A stretch of 64,000 bases of DNA, from assembly GCA_024704765.1 (NCBI GenBank), contig JAKMXF010000144.1, forward strand, positions 434,001 through 498,000. Direction: 5' to 3'. The notes under the pieces were generated by a model. The model did no database searches. It worked only from the letters and a program-made list of their open reading frames with translations, and was not told the DNA's origin. The DNA comes from Oopsacas minuta (lineage: Eukaryota > Animalia > Porifera). This document shows, piece by piece, positions 49,785 to 57,594 of this stretch (position 1 is its first letter; every line of letters starts with the position of its first letter). The position numbers were made by a program, and so were the translations under genes.

Positions 49785-52700
49785 TTACTTCCCCTCGACG
49801 TATACTTTTATCTGTTTTTCTATTTTTGAGAGTTTCTCTATCAATGCTGTGCCTAGAGCCTCGTCAACTTCAAATTCAACATTTTTATCCTAAAAACAAA
49901 GATTTTAGATTTCCTGTTTAGATAGAAATCAAATTTTGGCGGAAATTCCAGGGCTAAAATATCAAAATATTTCTGAGAATATTACTTACAGTTTTCGCAT
50001 CAGGTTTCCCCAATTTAAGCTGTAGAATTCCAATTGGGTCTGTCATCTGTTCTACTGACTTAGAACGACTTTTCACATCAACTCTCCAGCTGACAGACTT
50101 TAGCTTAGTTCCCCAATGACTATTTGAAATAACTACTTCATGTATCTACAGATGAATTAATTTCCTTAATAAATATTAGGTAATATATGTGAATAAATAA
50201 ATGGCTGTAAAGAGTCCACCAATTAGCCCAGATCTACTCGCCGCATCCCTCGACATTCTTTTCCAAGATTTGATAGATCAAGAATCTAAATCAGTGTATT
50301 TTGAGTTACACAGAGCAATCAAGCTAGGCTACTACACAGCACTGTATCCCCCTACTGATCCTATTCTTAAACAAACAGCTCAATCTGTAACCACTACACC
50401 GGTAGTGGATATATTCGGACAAGGTCAAAGTGCAAAGAAAGTAGTAGATTGTATCTGTCCGCAGTGTAAACGAACATTAGCTGCTACGAGGCTTGCACCA
50501 CATCTAGAAAAATGTATGGGGATGGGAAGGAATAGCAGTCGCATAGCTAGTCGACGGATACAGGCCTCGGGGAGACAAGCTGCTATATTAGGCGATCAAG
50601 AACCTGAAAATGAGTATGAATCAGATGAATACGTACCCAATGATTCAAAAAAGCAGAAGTTTAATTCAAATCTTAAGAATAATAGAAAAATACAAAAAGA
50701 GAAAAAATAATATATTTATGATTGTAAATCTCTAGAAATTATATATATTAATATATTTATATTTTACCTCGGGGAAAGGGAATTATCATTTTTGCTATAT
50801 TTTATCTATTATTTCATGCAACTGACAGATATGTACTCTACCTTAGAAACACGGACTAGTGGTAAATCTATCCCCAGCTCATTAGGAAAACAAGTCACAG
50901 TAGTTGGCCGTGTCTCACAGCTTGGTGGTAGCAATTTGAAACTGGTAACGCATGATGACAAGACTATTACAGTAAAGTTCTCAAGCAGTAGCTCACTACC
51001 AACACAGGATAGCATCGTGGAGGTTATAGGCACTGTATTACCCGATCAAACGATACAAAGTACTGCTTATCTTATCTTTGAAGAAGACTTTGACTTAACA
51101 ATGTATGATGAAGCAATGAAACTAGTAGATAAACTGCCAATATTCAAATGAACATCATCACTTACTTTGGATCTGTTTGCCTTCCAAAAGTCTTCAATAG
51201 ATTTAGCCTCATTCTCTGTCATGGAGTTCTAGAAATTACAAAAAAGTTAATTCTATCATTTCTGTATTTATTTGCAAATAAAATCAGTAAACTCTCATTT
51301 TAACGAAGTGCTCGGGACCCCGGTTTCATTTAATTATAAGCGGAGTAAAATCGATTACTTTCTAGCTGTAGGGGGTAAGAATCACTTCGTTATAACTGGA
51401 GTTTCGTTATATCCGACTTGGTTATAACGAGAGAGTTTACTGTATTTTCAGAAAATTATTCACCAAAATAGATTGCAGATTAATAGTGAAAATAATTACT
51501 AAATCTGGGATGATTGTAGTATGAATGGGGATGACAATACCGACAACTTAGCTACTCTCCCTCAAATAACCGGTCAGACAATAACCACTACACTAACTTC
51601 ACGATATACGTCACAAAAAATCTACACTCGTATCGGCGATATCCTCATCGCACTCAATCCTTTTGAGGATTTAGACTTATACTCTGACGAGGCCATTAGT
51701 GAATATTCAACACACCCGGAGATCTATTCACTTCCCCCTCATATTTATTCCATATCACAGGATTCATTCAATTGTTTAAAGGATAAAGGTCATAATCAGT
51801 GTTGTGTGATAAGCGGAGAGAGTGGATCTGGTAAAACCGAGACAGCTAAATTACTGATGACATTTCTAAGTCATTCTTGTGAAACTCTAGTACAACATCT
51901 ACCAGAGCAATGTCATAATATGAATCCATTGATTGAAGCGTTTGGTAACGCGAAAACTGTTATGAATGCTAATTCCAGTAGATTCGGGAAATACGTGGAG
52001 TTACAGTTTACTTCAGTAGGAGAGCTAGTTGGAGCTAATATAACTGAATACCTGCTAGAGAAGAGTCGTGTCATATCACACGCTGAAGGAGAACAGAATT
52101 TTCATATTTTCTATTATCTATACGCTGGACTCACGCCTGAATACTTGAGTAAACTTAAGCTAGACATCTCAAGTAATCACCGGTATTTAGCTTCTAACAG
52201 TGTAGACACCGTGATACTCAATGACGTCACTAACCAGAAGATGTGGAGAGATAAGTTCCAGGAAATTGTGCACTGTTTTTCTACACTCGGTTTCTCCCGC
52301 GAATTATTGTTTCAAATGCTATCCATACTTATAACCATACTATACATTGGGGACATAGAGTTCGAAATGGATGAGGAAGATTACGCTGTTATAGCTAATC
52401 CGTCCTTACTGATAAAAGTAGCAGGAATCCTGGGAGTAACCACACGCAAACTAGAATATGTATTGACTACAATTGTTAATACGATAAAAGGAGGAGAGAT
52501 TATTTGTAAGAAATGTTCAGTAGATAAAGCATCAGCTCTGAGAGATGCAACGGCTAAGGCAATATATAGTCGGTTGTTTTCATGGATAATAGCTCAGATA
52601 AACGCGTCTCTAGGCAAGGACCATTGGTCAGGGAGAGTTATAAGTGTGCTGGATATATTCGGGTTCGAGAACTTTAAATCTAACTATTTTGAACAGTTAT

Positions 52701-55700
52701 GTATCGACACAGCCAACGAACAACTGCAATTCTATTTCAATCAGCATATATTCGCGTGGGAGGTTGATGAATACAAATCTGAGAATATTCCTCTTGAAAA
52801 TATAGAATTTGTAAACAATAAACACATATGTGATATGCTATTGAAACGACCAGGTGGGATATTCTCATTGCTAGATGAAGAGAGTGTATTTCCGAAGGCG
52901 AATGATCAAACATTTTTAGATAAAATAAAGACTCATTGCAAGGATAGTGAAGGAATTTTGAAATTCTCACGAGCGAATAATCTCAGCTTCAAGATTAGAC
53001 ATTTTGCGGGGGATGTCGAGTACTCTTGTCAGGATATTCTAGAGAAAAACCGCGATACTCTAAGTGACAACATAGTACAACTACTGGAGACCTGTGAACA
53101 TTATCTAATCCGCGAGTTATTCACCAAAAGCTCTCTCACTCGCATCGGCAATCTTCAAATAAAGAGCAAATATCTAAACTGCCCTAAGCGTTCACACAGT
53201 ATGAAGAAGACATGGGGTAGAGCTACTAATCGTACACATAGTATACGACAACCAATCAAGAAGAAAACGTCTAAAGTAAGTGGTAGTGGTAGCTTGATTA
53301 TCAGTGGTCCACCCCCTACAGTAGGACTAATGTTCAGGAACTCTCTGTGTGACCTAATGGAGAAAATGCTATCATGTACTCCTCATTTTATACGATGTAT
53401 TAAACCTAATCAAAGGAACTTTCCAGGAGAAGTTGATAAGGATTTTATTGAGAGACAGCTAAGAAGCACTGGTGTACTGGAAACAGTTAGAATAAGACAA
53501 TCTGGCTACTCATTCAGACCTGAATTTGCTACATTTCTAAGGAGCTACGGACAGCTGGTATTTCAATTCACTGCAAATCCTCAAGCAAATAAGGAGAACT
53601 GTAGTACTGTACTGAGGAAGCTGGGGATAGAAGATTGGATGATGGGAGAAACTAAAGTATTTCTAAAGTACTACCATTCAGCACAGCTTGATAAACTGAA
53701 TGAGAATCAACTTACGAGTATAGTAACTGTTCAGAAAATAGCTAGAAGTTATCTAGCTAGACATACCATCAAGAGGATGAAGATCAATGCTAATTGTGAA
53801 GAGACGATAATTGGGGAATTGTGTCAACAAATTGAGCGAGAGGGAGAGCAGGTAATGACAGAGCTCAATAGAGTTTGTTCTAAAGATAGTCAAGCCTTTA
53901 TCTCATTAACTTTTAGGAGTATATCTTCATTAAATATCCCAGATGTGTCTCCATGTACAACGCCAGCAGATTCTCCAGAATTGGTCTCACCCCCTCTCGA
54001 GTGTCTTATCTCCTTCCCTCCTGCTCCTTCTATTTCAGATTTATTCCATCAACTACCAGAACTCGCGGAATCTAACACGTTAGTTTCTAGCACTAGTTTT
54101 GATATTCGTACTGTCCGAGAAGCAGATGAGGAAAGATTCTCAGAATACTTTGAAGCAGAGAATCTTCCACCTAAACTACGATCTTGCAACTCATTTGGCC
54201 TTCCGTTCACTCCGGTTATTAACAAGAAAAGATTAAGCAGATACTCAGTTACACGCTCCAGCAGTAAAAATAGTTTTGATGAAGATATTCAAATAACAGA
54301 CAAGAGAAGTTTATCGGAATCTGACAGTTTTGTATCAAAACAAATAAAATCAGATAACAAAAATACAAGAATACATACCCAACCTACCCCATGTCCTTAC
54401 ACAAGGGAAAACGGAGAGATTCGTAACTGGCTCCGTATTCTATGCAGTGTAGAGCCTGTTAATAAAGTTAGCGAGTTCTTAATCTCACAACCTTCAATTA
54501 TTATTAATGGCAACAAAAACATGTTTGATCCCACAACTCTAAGCTTAGGTACTATATTAAACCCTAGGAAGAAAGGAAATGGCTATTTCGGTAAAGGCAT
54601 AGAGATATTCAGAGATATGTCTGGTGACGTGTATTGTAAGAGACTGAGTAAGAATCCTATTACATTGCTTAACTTTGAAAAGAAGAATTTCTATAGCAAA
54701 AAGTTATCCGCGTTGAATGGTGTTCTCCCCTTAAACGAATTAGTCAAATTAATCGATTTTAAGAAGTGTTGTGAGTTTGCGAATGAGGCTAGCGGATCAG
54801 GTGTTGTTGTCTTCACACCTGTCGAGACAATATGGGGACTCAAGCTCAAATTCCAATTGCACAAAAATGAAACCATGATACCTAATATTGAGATTCACTT
54901 CCTAGAGGCAATTGATTATTATAAAAAGCATTATCTGAAGCGGCCAATTGAAAGTATAGGCTCATTTACAACTGATGGTAGTATAGGCAGTGATGGAGAG
55001 AGTCAAGCGATTGAAGAAACAAATACGAGAGAAGGGGCGAGCATTTGGGTTGATATTTACCGTACACATAACAAGAAACATAATAGATCAGTACGACGCA
55101 GAAATGTATTAGAAAGCAGTGTATTTATGTCAGAGAATACAGATACTGATATATCTCACATAGAAATAGAAAAGTATATACCTCCTGAAAAGAATACCAG
55201 TATTAAATCTAAAACTCCCGTATTCAGAAGGAAAAATAAAGCTTCTAAACGAGCAGCTATCAACACACAGAGTCAAGATATAGATCAGCTACTAAGTCAC
55301 ACAGATAGCATCCTAATTGATAGTTCTACTCCTCGTCCTAAAAGCACAGAACTTGACTTAGCAGTACTTAATATCCCAGAAATAAAAATATCTAATGAAG
55401 AGGACAAGATAACATCGAAAGAGACAAGACGCCGTCCAACTGATTTACCCAGTGGGAAGATAACATATACTAGCGTAAGGAGGAGAAACCGTGAAGCAGA
55501 GAGGAATAGAATTCATGAAGGTAATTTCTCACCTGTATCCCCCTCCAGAGATGAGAACCGTCCACTACATCTACTAGCTCAGCCTAATGTACAGCAACAC
55601 TACTCCCAGTTCCATGAAGGTAACGTAACAGCTGCTCAGTTACAAAATGCTAAGATAATACAATTACATGAAGCATTCCTTCAGCAAGCTAACGAGCTTA

Positions 55701-56477
55701 CAAAGATGAAAGGAGTGATATTTTCATCAGGAATACCTAAACAGAGAATCGAACAGTCACCTCCAAACTTAGGAATGTTGACAAGGAAAAAATGGCATAA
55801 ACCAATGACAGAGAATGTAGTAGAGAAGAGACCTATTCTCTCAAGAGCAACAAAACGTGTAAATAAATTGAAATAATGTATAAATTTCTTAATTTTTTGT
55901 GTACAAATTGTATGTAATAATAATTTGTTGAATGAGCTAATATTAAACTTTTGTATAAAGTCAGTCACTGAATAGTGTTTCTTATGAAATTAGGTAACAA
56001 GAACTAAGCAGTAATTACCACCTGGCGCTATAATTGCAATTTTATTTAACAGCCACAAATGAGTGGGTAGCCAAATGGAAATGTGGTTCAAAGCTTTTGG
56101 TTGTTGCAGTGTTGATTACTTTTAGCTGAGTAGGTTGTAATATTGTATAATACATGTAGAATTAGGTATTTGACCTGTCTCTTATTCTTCTGTGAAGTGA
56201 GGTAAGCAGTCAATTGAGTAAAATCCATATCCACACTGACTAGTGCTTGTAATACACCTGTGTATCTCTTCTTGAATGCTTCATAATCTACCAACACACG
56301 CATGCTGTAGGTTATTTGACCAAAATTATCAAACATAAAGTTTAAAGAATAAAACTAACTGGTAGATCCTAGCTGGTTGGCATATTCCTCCATTTCTTGA
56401 GTCTCCTCATTATCATCGTACAATACTTTACTCAGTTCTGTCAGATATACTGCCAGCACATCTCCCTTCTCTGCCAT
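49785..56477 (-). CDS. COMMD1: COMM domain-containing protein 1; 5 exons (56477-56360, 56287-56175, 51228-51166, 50145-49990, 49889-49785), 184 aa
   Basis: The spliced 555-nt frame reads MAEKGDVL...TGVLQALVSVDMDFTQLTAYLTSQ..|..IEDFWKANRSK|IHEVVISNSHWGTKLKSVSWRVDVKSRSK...PIGILQLKLG..|DKNVEFEVDE...KLSKIEKQI. This is colinear with COMMD1 (SADMDFNQLEAFLTAQ, KFWK, LSWRVDGKSQSR). All junctions are GT-AG. Confidence 0.9.
50201..50710 (+). CDS. ATXN7L3: Ataxin-7-like 3 / SAGA DUB subunit SGF11; nested in COMMD1 intron 3
   Basis: FELHRAIKLG; DIFGQ; CICPQCKRTLAATRLAPHLEKCMGMGRNSSRIASRRI zinc finger. Confidence 0.93.
   Translation: MAVKSPPISPDLLAASLDILFQDLIDQESKSVYFELHRAIKLGYYTALYPPTDPILKQTAQSVTTTPVVDIFGQGQSAKKVVDCICPQCKRTLAATRLAPHLEKCMGMGRNSSRIASRRIQASGRQAAILGDQEPENEYESDEYVPNDSKKQKFNSNLKNNRKIQKEKK
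50831..51151 (+). CDS. RPA3: Replication protein A 14-kDa subunit; nested in COMMD1 intron 3
   Basis: OB-fold pattern GKQVTVVGRV...IVEVIGTV...FDLTMYDEAMKL; an alternative ATG lies at 50816. Confidence 0.85.
   Translation: MYSTLETRTSGKSIPSSLGKQVTVVGRVSQLGGSNLKLVTHDDKTITVKFSSSSSLPTQDSIVEVIGTVLPDQTIQSTAYLIFEEDFDLTMYDEAMKLVDKLPIFK
51285..51442. mobile_element. Tigger/pogo-like MITE immediately upstream of the myosin ATG
   Basis: CAGTAAACTCTCATTTTAACGAA...GTTATAACGAGAGAGTTTACTG-TA inverted termini. Confidence 0.7.
51521..55876 (+). CDS. Unconventional myosin (class III-like head without kinase, one IQ) with MH2-like tail domain; single exon, nested in COMMD1 intron 2
   Basis: GESGSGKT P-loop, NANSSRFGK switch I, DIFGFE switch II, PHFIRCIKPN; IQ-like VQKIARSYLAR; MH2-like segment at ~54425-54920. 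Confidence 0.92.
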   Translation: MNGDDNTDNLATLPQITGQTITTTLTSRYTSQKIYTRIGDILIALNPFEDLDLYSDEAISEYSTHPEIYSLPPHIYSISQDSFNCLKDKGHNQCCVISGESGSGKTETAKLLMTFLSHSCETLVQHLPEQCHNMNPLIEAFGNAKTVMNANSSRFGKYVELQFTSVGELVGANITEYLLEKSRVISHAEGEQNFHIFYYLYAGLTPEYLSKLKLDISSNHRYLASNSVDTVILNDVTNQKMWRDKFQEIVHCFSTLGFSRELLFQMLSILITILYIGDIEFEMDEEDYAVIANPSLLIKVAGILGVTTRKLEYVLTTIVNTIKGGEIICKKCSVDKASALRDATAKAIYSRLFSWIIAQINASLGKDHWSGRVISVLDIFGFENFKSNYFEQLCIDTANEQLQFYFNQHIFAWEVDEYKSENIPLENIEFVNNKHICDMLLKRPGGIFSLLDEESVFPKANDQTFLDKIKTHCKDSEGILKFSRANNLSFKIRHFAGDVEYSCQDILEKNRDTLSDNIVQLLETCEHYLIRELFTKSSLTRIGNLQIKSKYLNCPKRSHSMKKTWGRATNRTHSIRQPIKKKTSKVSGSGSLIISGPPPTVGLMFRNSLCDLMEKMLSCTPHFIRCIKPNQRNFPGEVDKDFIERQLRSTGVLETVRIRQSGYSFRPEFATFLRSYGQLVFQFTANPQANKENCSTVLRKLGIEDWMMGETKVFLKYYHSAQLDKLNENQLTSIVTVQKIARSYLARHTIKRMKINANCEETIIGELCQQIEREGEQVMTELNRVCSKDSQAFISLTFRSISSLNIPDVSPCTTPADSPELVSPPLECLISFPPAPSISDLFHQLPELAESNTLVSSTSFDIRTVREADEERFSEYFEAENLPPKLRSCNSFGLPFTPVINKKRLSRYSVTRSSSKNSFDEDIQITDKRSLSESDSFVSKQIKSDNKNTRIHTQPTPCPYTRENGEIRNWLRILCSVEPVNKVSEFLISQPSIIINGNKNMFDPTTLSLGTILNPRKKGNGYFGKGIEIFRDMSGDVYCKRLSKNPITLLNFEKKNFYSKKLSALNGVLPLNELVKLIDFKKCCEFANEASGSGVVVFTPVETIWGLKLKFQLHKNETMIPNIEIHFLEAIDYYKKHYLKRPIESIGSFTTDGSIGSDGESQAIEETNTREGASIWVDIYRTHNKKHNRSVRRRNVLESSVFMSENTDTDISHIEIEKYIPPEKNTSIKSKTPVFRRKNKASKRAAINTQSQDIDQLLSHTDSILIDSSTPRPKSTELDLAVLNIPEIKISNEEDKITSKETRRRPTDLPSGKITYTSVRRRNREAERNRIHEGNFSPVSPSRDENRPLHLLAQPNVQQHYSQFHEGNVTAAQLQNAKIIQLHEAFLQQANELTKMKGVIFSSGIPKQRIEQSPPNLGMLTRKKWHKPMTENVVEKRPILSRATKRVNKLK

Positions 56478-57165: not shown

Positions 57166-57594
57166 TTAATATCCAGCAATCATAGCATATAATGTAAAAT
57201 AAAGATAAATAAAAAACACACAGAGATGATAACCTAGCTTGATAAACGTATCTCTAGTCGCAGTATACAGATTACCCCTATTTCTAATCTCAGTGGGGTC
57301 ATACATACCCATAGCATCTTTGGGTAATTTAACAAATCTGTATATTAGAAAACCAGAAAACGGAGCTGCAAATATGATAAACAATACGTAATGCCATGAT
57401 AGAAGTAGAAATATAGAGATAACACAATGTGATACTATCTCTGGGATAACGAATCTATTCAATCTTTGACAACATGCCTTACTGTTAAGATAATCACACT
57501 CTAGGTCAGATAACATTATCACAAAGTATACTGTAAGGAATAGGAGACATGTTGTTATCACGAGACATAGCAGGAATATTATGGGGTCTGGCAT
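57166..57594 (-). CDS. CNIH4: Cornichon family cargo receptor (CNIH4-like); single exon
   Basis: VYFVIMLSDLECDYLNSKACCQRLN..VIPE; YDPTEI.NRG; FIKLGYHL..FFIYLY. Confidence 0.92.
   Translation of the reverse strand: MPDPIIFLLCLVITTCLLFLTVYFVIMLSDLECDYLNSKACCQRLNRFVIPEIVSHCVISIFLLLSWHYVLFIIFAAPFSGFLIYRFVKLPKDAMGMYDPTEIRNRGNLYTATRDTFIKLGYHLCVFFIYLYFTLYAMIAGY

What the first reader, a model, noticed from the sequence alone, without database searches (positions are those of the whole stretch)
54425..54920. Myosin motor fused to a Smad MH2-like domain
The tail segment W-LRILCSVE...EFLISQPSIIING...LSLGTILNPR...FGKGIEI...GDVYCKRLSKNPI...IEIHFLEAIDY follows the MH2 pattern (WCSIAYYE..ASQPSLTVDG..CLGLLSN..IGRGVRL..GEVFAECLSDSAI..IELHL). 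There is no MH1 or SSxS tail, and the motor motifs are intact, so this would be an actin-based carrier for MH2-binding cargo. Myosin-MH2 architectures probably exist in some invertebrate annotations but are functionally unstudied. Speculation: MH2-only proteins (Drosophila Expansion/Rebuf) control chitin synthase output, so a link to chitin or skeleton deposition, or to TGF-beta receptor transport, is testable.
Basis: partly seen in the sequence, partly recalled or inferred. Interest (0 to 1): 0.7.

Follow-up and report, generated by a model that had tools for sequence, protein, structure and literature searches.

The report
Glass-sponge myosin with MH2 tail
This intronless gene of the glass sponge Oopsacas minuta really does encode an actin motor (myosin) whose tail carries a Smad-type MH2 protein-binding domain, but this architecture was already described in 2014 and 2017 and is widespread in sponges, cnidarians, echinoderms, annelids and molluscs, so this is a new member of a known but functionally unstudied family.

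Summary
Window 51521-55876 (+) is one uninterrupted 1451-codon ORF of Oopsacas minuta (Hexactinellida). It has a myosin motor (Pfam E 1e-192) with intact ATPase motifs, one IQ motif and an MH2 domain at aa 962-1146.

On the single sequence MH2 is only borderline in Pfam (23-27 bits, cut-off 25). Stronger tests prove it:
- All nine glass-sponge orthologues hit MH2.
- A 22-sequence profile hits Expansion N-alpha-MH2 (4r9p) at 6e-37 and Smads at about 1e-25 to 1e-21.
- A confident AlphaFold model (pLDDT 85) matches 4r9p and every Smad MH2 (Z 16-18).

The architecture is not new. Sebe-Pedros 2014 reported MH2 myosins in Salpingoeca and Oscarella. Kollmar 2017 defined class-80 and lophotrochozoan orphans. 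I also found them in all four sponge classes, two cnidarians, ambulacrarians, an annelid and molluscs, usually named 'myosin-III-like'.

The domain is not Smad-like in function: there is no MH1, no SSxS, and the L3 loop has 8 residues against about 15 in Smads. It also lacks Expansion's N-alpha helix. The most likely role is a cargo- or partner-binding module on a short-lever actin motor. The partner is unknown, and the chitin-synthase link is only a hypothesis.

This scan has a withheld follow-up report on an overlapping stretch; I did not see it.

The parts
51521..55876 (+). Complete intronless ORF, 1451 aa plus stop: the MH2-tailed myosin of Oopsacas minuta (protein P0009, already in NCBI/UniRef/nr)
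   Evidence: The same start and end are found in eight orthologues. Contigs of an RNA-containing run tile it without internal joints.
51539..53668 (+). Myosin motor domain, aa 7-716
   Evidence: Pfam Myosin_head E 1.1e-192, profile positions 1-679 of 679
51815..51838 (+). P-loop GESGSGKT (aa 99-106)
   Evidence: invariant in the nine orthologues
51965..51991 (+). Switch I NANSSRFGK (aa 149-157)
52652..52669 (+). Switch II DIFGFE (aa 378-383)
53729..53761 (+). Single IQ-like light-chain-binding motif VQKIARSYLAR (aa 737-747). A conserved, proline-free segment follows to about aa 800.
   Evidence: Regex match; weak Pfam IQ hit at the same place (protein 3); aligned with the IQ of all other MH2 myosins
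54137..54238 (+). Glass-sponge-specific conserved linker motif FSEYF..NLPxKLR..PFTPVINKKRLS (aa 873-906) inside an S/T- and P-rich linker (aa 801-961)
   Evidence: Invariant columns; not alignable to non-hexactinellid relatives
54404..54958 (+). MH2 domain (aa 962-1146): beta-sandwich plus helices.
54854..54877 (+). L3-loop equivalent QLHKNETM (aa 1112-1119), 8 residues, between the last two strands. The usual TPCW is replaced by IPNI.
   Evidence: Secondary structure of the model; loop lengths by group
55040..55069 (+). Post-MH2 conserved Trp motif SIWVDIYRTH (aa 1174-1183). It aligns with the R-K-W-A-K motif of bilaterian MH2 myosins.
   Evidence: Invariant W1176, V1177, I1179, Y1180, R1181, T1182; alignment. 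The correspondence to the bilaterian motif rests on the MAFFT alignment only.
55784..55801 (+). C-terminal basic Trp motif RKKWHK (aa 1422-1427), 30 residues from the C-terminus. It is a family signature shared with Sycon, ambulacrarian and lophotrochozoan MH2 myosins.
   Evidence: one match per tail against 0.03-0.17 expected in shuffles
51229..56174 (-). Intron of the antisense host gene (COMMD1-like) that contains the whole myosin gene
   Evidence: Contig joint 51228->56175 in run X4 with ends CT..AC, which is GT..AG on the minus strand; COMMD1_N hit on the flanking minus-strand gene

Best explanation
The gene encodes a member of the MH2-tailed myosin family. Sebe-Pedros 2014 call these myosin III-like with a C-terminal MH2. 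They are the non-bilaterian counterpart of Kollmar's class-80 and the lophotrochozoan orphans.

Shown here: the ATPase motifs of the motor are intact, there is a single IQ motif, and there is a complete MH2 beta-sandwich. The tail layout is shared with relatives from all four sponge classes and from ambulacrarians, an annelid and molluscs: IQ, helical segment, linker, MH2, Trp motif, linker, C-terminal basic Trp motif. The two cnidarian relatives share the motor and the MH2 but not the C-terminal motif.

Inferred: the protein is an actin-based motor with a short lever arm. Its MH2 domain acts as a docking module that ties a protein partner or cargo to the motor, or that places the motor at a site. 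Three things are missing: the 6-residue Smad insertion in the L3 loop, a C-terminal SSxS, and an MH1 domain. It therefore most likely does not act as a receptor-phosphorylated, trimerising Smad. It more likely binds its partner constitutively, as MH2 and IRF-type domains do through surface patches or beta-strand addition. The long basic, S/T-rich extensions and the conserved C-terminal RKKWHK motif are probably further binding or regulatory sites. The partner is unknown.
For: - One ORF with motor and MH2; catalytic motifs and IQ motif.
- Eight orthologues at 57-72% identity with the same architecture, and conserved gene order Sgf11-RPA3-myosin-cornichon-ELO in the locus of the most distant one.
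- MH2 by profile and by structure.
- The same architecture in Corticium, Dysidea, Sycon, Hydractinia, Rhopilema, hemichordates, echinoderms, Owenia, Liolophura and Patella.
- The glass-sponge tail profile finds the MH2 of each of the 13 other MH2 myosins listed (E 5e-20 to 4e-8).
- In the motor tree, glass-sponge plus other MH2 myosins form one side of a branch (support 76).
- In the MH2 domain tree, the glass-sponge clade pairs with the Corticium myosin MH2 (80) inside a 96-supported set of myosin MH2s.
- The C-terminal basic Trp motif is shared.
- L3 region: 8 residues here, median 9 in other myosin MH2s, 15 in Smads.
- Prior descriptions of the architecture: PMC3942036 and PMC5583752.
- Contigs of an RNA-containing run cover the whole ORF with no joints.
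Against: - No experiment on any MH2 myosin was found, so the docking role is inference from what MH2 domains do in Smads and Expansion.
- The motor tree is weak at the decisive node (support 76). A grouping of the glass-sponge motors with kinase-bearing class III is not rejected (AU p 0.19), and the glass-sponge motor sits on a very long branch (1.35).
- The AlphaFold alignment contained Smad and Expansion-like domains, so the model is not independent of the homology inference.
- Whether the protein dimerises was not tested.
- Transcription is only suggested. The run's type is not on record, and contigs cannot show the strand or level of an RNA.
Confidence: 0.8

Rival explanations
1. Chitin-synthase helper. 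The MH2 tail works like the N-alpha-MH2 of Drosophila Expansion/Rebuf. It would bring or hold the partner that lets the single Oopsacas chitin synthase export chitin, for instance during spicule scaffold formation, with the motor supplying actin-based delivery.
For: - Expansion (4r9p) is the best solved-structure match by sequence profile (5.7e-37, against 4e-25 or weaker for Smads) and by fold.
- The short L3 loop is shared with the Exp/Reb-layout proteins.
- The N-alpha-MH2 of Exp/Reb is required for chitin translocation by the synthase Kkv (PMC9894549).
- Animal chitin-synthase myosins lie in the same myosin III-like neighbourhood, and lophotrochozoan MH2 orphans group beside them (PMC3942036; PMC5583752).
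- O. minuta has one chitin synthase, which its genome paper places in the biosilicification scheme (PMC10280926).
Against: - The glass-sponge domain lacks the N-alpha helix motif that defines the Exp/Reb domain (0 of 9 score).
- In the domain tree the Exp/Reb-layout proteins form a separate clade (93), while the glass-sponge domain sits with other myosin MH2s and the Smad clade. The higher similarity to Expansion therefore reflects slower change, not closer kinship.
- No physical or expression link to chitin synthase was tested here.
Confidence: 0.1
2. TGF-beta pathway component. The MH2 binds Smads, receptors or Smad cofactors, so that the motor carries TGF-beta signalling parts along actin.
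For: The fold is that of Smad MH2. In the domain tree the Smad clade falls in the same well-supported set as the sponge and cnidarian myosin MH2s. O. minuta keeps the core TGF-beta pathway (PMC10280926).
Against: - There is no SSxS and no MH1.
- The L3 loop mediates receptor and phosphoserine contacts and trimer formation in Smads (PMC4388265). It has 8 residues here against about 15 in Smads and lacks the GWG-DY-R insertion.
- The TPCW motif is replaced.
- The choanoflagellate Salpingoeca has an MH2 myosin although Smads are animal-specific (PMC3942036), so the architecture predates Smads.
Confidence: 0.07
3. Artefact or chance. Either the MH2-like stretch is a chance similarity, or the long ORF is a mis-assembled or read-through join of two genes.
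For: On the single sequence the Pfam score straddles the cut-off (23.1-26.7 bits against 25) and covers only about 70% of the profile. The first AlphaFold run failed (pLDDT 32).
Against: - Nine species keep the same uninterrupted ORF.
- Independent runs reproduce the sequence without differences.
- Profile E-values reach 1e-37, and the second model is confident with Z 17.6 to a solved MH2.
- The same fusion occurs in at least six other animal phyla or classes.
Confidence: 0.01

Closest known systems
MH2-tailed myosins: 'myosin III-like with C-terminal MH2' (Salpingoeca rosetta, Oscarella carmela; Sebe-Pedros et al. 2014, PMC3942036) and class-80 myosins plus lophotrochozoan orphans (Kollmar and Muhlhausen 2017, PMC5583752)
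   Same: A motor without an N-terminal kinase, one IQ motif, an MH2 in the tail with a short L3 loop, and a basic Trp motif near the C-terminus. The nearest non-hexactinellid relative is the homoscleromorph sponge Corticium, in both the profile search (813 bits full length; tail E 5e-20) and the domain tree.
   Different: - The glass-sponge proteins are about 200-250 aa longer, with expanded linkers on both sides of the MH2 and about 305 aa after it.
- The motor and the MH2 sit on very long branches (1.35 and 1.79).
- TPCW is replaced by IPNI/LPRI, and the L3 region is one to two residues shorter.
- The gene is intronless and nested antisense in a host intron.
- Class-80 as defined is restricted to Ambulacraria, so this is not class-80 in the strict sense.
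Class III myosins (MYO3A/B, NINAC)
   Same: The motor domains are the next best matches after the MH2 myosins (about 42-44% identity, 700-735 bits). Public annotation calls the MH2 myosins 'myosin-IIIa/b-like'.
   Different: [quoted passage not shown] The tail has one IQ and an MH2, whereas the listed class III proteins carry the kinase and IQ families but never MH2 (precomputed Pfam). Class III forms its own side of the motor tree (support 89).
Expansion/Rebuf N-alpha-MH2 proteins of ecdysozoans (PDB 4r9p; PMC4388265, PMC9894549)
   Same: Best solved-structure match by sequence and fold. Short L3 loop. No MH1 and no SSxS.
   Different: - In Exp/Reb the domain is N-terminal, is preceded by the N-alpha helix, and is followed by a tail with the CM2 motif. 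Here it lies behind a motor.
- The N-alpha motif is absent here.
- Exp/Reb-layout proteins are a separate clade in the domain tree.
Smad transcription factors (R-Smads, Smad4)
   Same: The MH2 fold, Z 16-17 over about 165 residues. The sequence profile matches the whole domain.
   Different: There is no MH1, no linker PY or phosphorylation region typical of Smads, and no SSxS. The L3 region has 8 residues against 15. About 15-18% identity.

Membership tests
MH2-tailed myosins (myosin III-like MH2 group; class-80 and allied orphans) | Myosin motor domain and MH2 domain in one polypeptide | tested here: met
   Single ORF. Pfam Myosin_head E 1e-192 and MH2. The MH2 is proven by profile and fold.
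MH2-tailed myosins (myosin III-like MH2 group; class-80 and allied orphans) | Motor groups with the other MH2 myosins in a motor-domain tree | tested here: inconclusive
   They are one side of a branch, but with SH-aLRT support of only 76. The alternative with class III is not rejected (AU p 0.19).
MH2-tailed myosins (myosin III-like MH2 group; class-80 and allied orphans) | MH2 domain groups with myosin MH2 domains | tested here: met
   The glass-sponge clade (100) pairs with the Corticium myosin MH2 (80) within a 34-row set (96) of myosin MH2s plus the Smad clade.
MH2-tailed myosins (myosin III-like MH2 group; class-80 and allied orphans) | Shared tail layout: IQ, MH2 with short L3, C-terminal basic Trp motif | tested here: met
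Class-80 myosins sensu Kollmar 2017 | Membership of the ambulacrarian clade | tested here: not met
   The ambulacrarian motors and MH2 domains form their own well-supported clades, which exclude the glass-sponge sequences. The class is defined as restricted to Ambulacraria.
Class III myosins | N-terminal protein kinase domain | tested here: not met
   No kinase hit in Pfam. The motor starts at aa 7, and the orthologues start at the same place.
Smad proteins | N-terminal MH1 DNA-binding domain | tested here: not met
   No MH1 hit at E up to 10
Smad proteins | Long (17-residue) L3 loop and, in R-Smads, a C-terminal SSxS | tested here: not met
   The L3 region has 8 residues against a median of 15 in the Smads of the same alignment. 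The only SSxS-like string is in the linker at aa 856, and the C-terminus is KRVNKLK.
Expansion/Rebuf N-alpha-MH2 family | N-alpha helix directly preceding the MH2 | tested here: not met
   A profile of the 30 residues upstream of the conserved Trp in 23 Exp/Reb-layout proteins scores below 0 bits in all nine glass-sponge sequences. The stretch here is proline-rich (PTPCPYT).
Expansion/Rebuf N-alpha-MH2 family | Shortened L3 loop (11 against 17 residues in the crystal-structure paper) | tested here: met
   PMC4388265
Expansion/Rebuf N-alpha-MH2 family | MH2 at the N-terminus followed by a tail with the CM2 localisation motif | tested here: not met
   The MH2 lies at aa 962-1146 behind a motor. 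The CM2 motif itself was not searched for.

The most novel reading that the evidence does not exclude
MH2-tailed myosins are the ancestral home of the MH2 domain, and both derived MH2 families budded from them. Smads would have gained the long L3 loop and an MH1. The ecdysozoan Expansion/Rebuf chitin-deposition factors would be the motor-less remnant of a protostome MH2 myosin. The second step is suggested by the Exp/Reb N-alpha helix motif recurring just upstream of the MH2 in four bilaterian myosin tails, of which the two I could name are molluscs. Animal chitin-synthase myosins sit in the same myosin neighbourhood. Together this would point to an old myosin, MH2 and chitin-synthase working unit, which the glass-sponge protein might still serve in chitin-templated silica skeleton formation.
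Probability: 0.2. Interest if true: 0.65.

Novelty: new member of a known kind. Interest (0 to 1): 0.4.

Why it matters
The MH2 domain is best known as the signalling heart of Smads. Its presence on a myosin in choanoflagellates and sponges is the basis of the published idea that MH2 began as a myosin cargo domain (PMC3942036).

The glass-sponge orthologues complete the picture for sponges, because all four classes now have one. They also show that the short L3 loop, and not the Smad-type loop, is the common state outside Smads.

For annotation, the MH2 in this clade is divergent enough that the precomputed Pfam calls missed it in five of the nine glass-sponge proteins, including this one. The family is widespread in marine invertebrates, absent from the usual model organisms and untouched experimentally. 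Any functional result, such as a binding partner or a localisation, would be new. The find itself is an expected member of a described family, not a new kind of protein.

Tried and rejected
1. The first AlphaFold run used nine closely related tails and failed (pLDDT 32). It worked only after the exhaustive profile search supplied a 95-sequence alignment.

2. The third word search, made with a padded MH2 alignment to reach Smads and Exp/Reb proteins, returned only five short fragments. The length window seems to follow the profile and not the padded first row. This is why I used the costly exhaustive search.

3. I first read the much higher profile score to Expansion than to Smads as closer kinship. 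The domain tree does not support that, and I dropped that reading.

4. The N-alpha helix seemed by eye to be shared by all bilaterian MH2 myosins. A profile test supports it for only 4 of 20, and the two I could name are molluscs.

5. The ESM Atlas look-up of the C-terminal 305 residues gave nothing usable.

6. No run on record as RNA holds the gene, so expression rests on one run of unknown type that shows a spliced joint.

7. The search of this scan's earlier notes for chitin synthase, Smad or MH2 in this genome found nothing.

8. I considered and rejected a class III myosin that lost its kinase as the simplest label. The tail architecture is that of the MH2 myosins, and class III forms its own clade.

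Full report
**What is there**

It is aa 969-1133 of a single uninterrupted ORF of 1451 codons at 51521-55876 on the + strand. The window belongs to contig JAKMXF010000144.1 of assembly GCA_024704765.1. That is the genome of the glass sponge Oopsacas minuta (PMC10280926). The protein is already in NCBI, UniRef and nr.

**Domains**

Pfam gives Myosin_head over aa 7-716 at E 1.1e-192. It gives MH2 (PF03166) over aa 970-1087 at 23.1 bits for the whole protein and 25.9-26.7 bits for the tail alone. The curated cut-off is 25, and only profile positions 3-126 of 174 are covered. Alone, this is a borderline hit.

The motor has an intact P-loop (GESGSGKT), switch I (NANSSRFGK) and switch II (DIFGFE). 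One IQ-like motif (VQKIARSYLAR, aa 737-747) follows the motor. There is no MH1 and no C-terminal SSxS.

**Relatives and proof of the MH2**

A word search restricted to the tail found eight full-length relatives of 1289-1513 aa at 44-65% tail identity. All come from ENA assemblies and none has a name. They align end to end with the window protein. The locus of the most distant one keeps the gene order Sgf11, RPA3, myosin, cornichon, ELO, and its gene is also intronless. I take them to be hexactinellid orthologues. This is an inference from similarity and synteny, because the sources give no organism.

All nine tails hit Pfam MH2, with a best E of 9.3e-11. A profile of the nine tails hits the N-alpha-MH2 domain of Drosophila Expansion (PDB 4r9p) at 7.9e-7, and Mad and Smad1/2/3 MH2 structures at 3e-4 to 3e-3.

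With 13 MH2 domains of other myosins added (alignment A3), the profile hits 4r9p at 5.7e-37 over the whole domain. It hits Smad4 at 3.9e-25, Smad1 at 6e-24, Smad2/3 at about 4e-22 to 3e-21, and Smad7 at 5e-11.

**Structure**

A first AlphaFold2 run on the nine-sequence alignment was useless (pLDDT 32). A 95-sequence alignment was then built from the exhaustive profile search. With it the model of aa 962-1146 reached mean pLDDT 85.4 and pTM 0.82.

- Foldseek against the PDB ranks 4r9p first (E 1.3e-12, TM 0.76). All Smad MH2 structures follow (TM 0.65-0.73), then the IRF association domains.
- The second aligner gives Z 17.6 for 4r9p, 16-16.8 for Smads, 12-15 for IRFs and about 10 for FHA domains.

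One caveat: the alignment used for the model contained Smad and Expansion-like domains, so the model is not independent of the homology.

**It is a known architecture**

Sebe-Pedros et al. [quoted passage not shown] They proposed that MH2 first arose on myosins and was later joined to MH1 to make Smads (PMC3942036). [quoted passage not shown] They noted lophotrochozoan orphans of the same architecture that group beside the chitin-synthase myosins of class-36 (PMC5583752).

My profile searches found the architecture, usually named 'myosin-IIIa/b-like' by RefSeq, in:
- sponges: Corticium (Homoscleromorpha), Dysidea (Demospongiae) and Sycon (Calcarea);
- cnidarians: Hydractinia and Rhopilema;
- hemichordates: Ptychodera and Glandiceps;
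- echinoderms: eight species;
- the annelid Owenia;
- the molluscs Liolophura and Patella.

With the glass sponges, all four sponge classes have it. I found no functional study.

**Placement**

The motor tree had 35 rows and was made with a quick IQ-TREE search. The rows were the nine glass-sponge motors, 13 other MH2 myosins, 12 class III myosins and one distant outgroup. No class-36, class XVI or choanoflagellate sequences were at hand.

- The nine glass-sponge motors form one clade (100) on a very long branch (1.35).
- Kinase-bearing class III is one side of a branch (89).
- Glass-sponge plus other MH2 myosins are one side of a branch with support of only 76.
- Holding the glass-sponge motors with class III is not rejected (AU p 0.19).

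The tail gives clearer evidence. The glass-sponge tail profile finds the MH2 of each of the 13 other MH2 myosins (E 5e-20 for Corticium down to 4e-8 for Dysidea). The order of tail elements is shared. A basic Trp motif, [KR]xxW[AH][KR], lies 8-33 residues from the C-terminus in glass sponges (RKKWHK), Sycon, ambulacrarians and lophotrochozoans, and at -67 in Corticium. It was not found in the two cnidarians or in Dysidea. Shuffled tails give 0.03-0.17 matches each.

The glass-sponge tails are about 200-250 aa longer than the others. They have expanded S/T- and P-rich linkers, a clade-specific motif (FSEYF..NLPxKLR..PFTPVINKKRLS), and about 305 residues after the MH2.

**What kind of MH2**

The exhaustive profile search found 1250 proteins at E up to 0.001. 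The best 149 are 16 myosins, 75 proteins with an N-terminal MH2 and a long tail, 42 short proteins, 7 with the domain in the middle, and 9 with it at the C-terminus. Names confirm that the C-terminal class are Smads and that the N-terminal class are 'MH2 domain-containing proteins' of nematodes and mites, which is the Expansion/Rebuf layout.

In a tree of 132 domains:
- the glass-sponge MH2s (100) pair with Corticium (80);
- they lie in a 34-row set (96) with the other sponge, cnidarian and ambulacrarian myosin MH2s, and the Smad clade (98) is in the same set;
- the Exp/Reb-layout proteins form a separate clade (93).

So the higher similarity to Expansion reflects the long Smad branch, not closer kinship. 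The tree is effectively unrooted and was made with a quick search, so the nesting of Smads among myosin MH2s agrees with the 2014 hypothesis but does not prove it.

Two diagnostic features were measured.

- L3 loop. In Smads this loop contacts receptors and phosphoserines and is needed for trimers. It has 17 residues in Smads and 11 in Expansion (PMC4388265). In my alignment the corresponding region has 8 residues in all nine glass-sponge proteins, a median of 9 in other myosin MH2s, 9 in Exp/Reb-layout proteins and 15 in Smads. Smads carry a GWG-DY-R insertion. The glass sponges also replace the near-universal TPCW by IPNI or LPRI.
- N-alpha helix. This helix defines the Expansion domain and blocks trimerisation. 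It has a recognisable sequence motif upstream of the conserved Trp in Exp/Reb-layout proteins. A profile of that motif scores 8 bits or more in 0 of 9 glass-sponge sequences, 0 of 8 other sponge or cnidarian sequences, 0 of 5 Smads, 4 of 20 bilaterian myosin MH2 tails (two named: the molluscs Patella and Liolophura) and 1 of 1160 shuffles.

The Oopsacas domain is thus neither Smad-type nor Expansion-type. It is a plain MH2 with a short L3 loop.

**How it most likely works**

Shown: an intact motor, one IQ motif, a complete MH2 and a conserved tail.

Inferred: it is an actin-based motor with a short lever arm whose MH2 docks a protein partner. It would do so without the phosphorylation-driven trimer switch of R-Smads, because the SSxS and the long L3 loop are missing. 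The basic extensions and the C-terminal RKKWHK motif are likely further binding or regulatory sites. I give this general reading 0.8.

Two specific partner hypotheses remain open. The first is chitin synthase, about 0.1. It rests on the Expansion similarity, the requirement of the Exp/Reb MH2 for chitin translocation (PMC9894549), the neighbourhood of chitin-synthase myosins, and the single chitin synthase that the Oopsacas paper places in its biosilicification scheme. The missing N-alpha motif and the domain tree count against it. The second is TGF-beta pathway parts, about 0.07. The pathway core is present in Oopsacas, but the L3 loop and the missing SSxS count against it.

**Gene context and expression**

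Four runs of one sample hold the gene. None is on record as RNA. Run X4 shows a contig joint 51228->56175 whose ends read GT..AG on the minus strand. It also has uneven depth, whereas X1-X3 are flat. X4 therefore contains RNA, and the whole myosin gene lies inside a 4946-nt intron of the antisense COMMD1-like gene. This agrees with the first-stage note s1-293495.

X4 contigs tile 51542-56005 with no internal joints. That fits an unspliced transcript, but contigs cannot show strand or level.

**Verdict**

The architecture is already published, so this is a new member (the hexactinellid orthologue) of a known but functionally unstudied family. Interest is moderate.

Limits of this report:
- The motor phylogeny lacks labelled class-36, class XVI and choanoflagellate references.
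- Oligomerisation was not tested.
- There is no strand-specific RNA.

Noticed in passing
window 51229-56174 (minus strand intron); flanking exons end at about 51228 and start at about 56175: The whole myosin gene is nested antisense inside a 4946-nt GT..AG intron of a COMMD1-like gene. A spliced contig joint in run X4 shows this. The downstream COMMD1 exon (about 51067-51228, minus) overlaps the 3' end of the RPA3-like gene (50792-51151, plus).
   Followed up: partly
window 51285-51442: A MITE-like element of about 155 bp with terminal inverted repeats CAGTAAACTCTC ... GAGAGTTTACTG lies about 80 bp upstream of the myosin ATG. Contigs of all four runs break here, with several different continuations, and depth is about three times higher in two DNA-like runs. 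It is therefore multi-copy in the genome, though there is only one copy in this window.
   Followed up: partly
Relatives P0135, P0138 (Patella), P0140, P0034 (Liolophura), about 30 residues upstream of their MH2: Four bilaterian MH2 myosins carry a motif such as FYQSILDQIMDKWDEIEPDV-W. The two I could name are molluscs. The motif resembles the N-alpha helix motif of ecdysozoan Expansion/Rebuf proteins (LYKDHIQEVLDKWTQIDDEI-W). They score 9-14 bits with an Exp/Reb-only profile, against 1 of 1160 shuffles at 8 bits or more. This hints that Exp/Reb descend from a protostome MH2 myosin tail. I found no paper that notes this.
   Followed up: partly
MH2 domain tree (132 domains from the session's protein hits): The Smad clade falls inside a well-supported set of sponge, cnidarian and ambulacrarian myosin MH2 domains. 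The long Smad L3 loop appears as a 6-residue insertion relative to all other MH2 groups. This agrees with the 2014 proposal that the Smad MH2 came from a myosin tail. The tree was a quick search and is effectively unrooted.
   Followed up: partly
window 50201-50710, 50792-51151, 57166-57594; locus L002: The gene order Sgf11, RPA3, MH2 myosin, cornichon, ELO elongase is kept between Oopsacas and the most distant of the presumed hexactinellid relatives (P0008 locus). All of these genes are short and tightly packed.
   Followed up: no
Proteins P0214 (Sycon ciliatum, 2164 aa, named 'protein split ends-like') and P0017 (Bulinus truncatus, 2076 aa, MyTH4 + IQ + motor): These two public gene models look like mis-named or fused predictions. 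P0214 has only a partial motor match and an MH2 at aa 1724-1891. P0017 was the top non-hexactinellid hit although it carries a MyTH4 domain.
   Followed up: no
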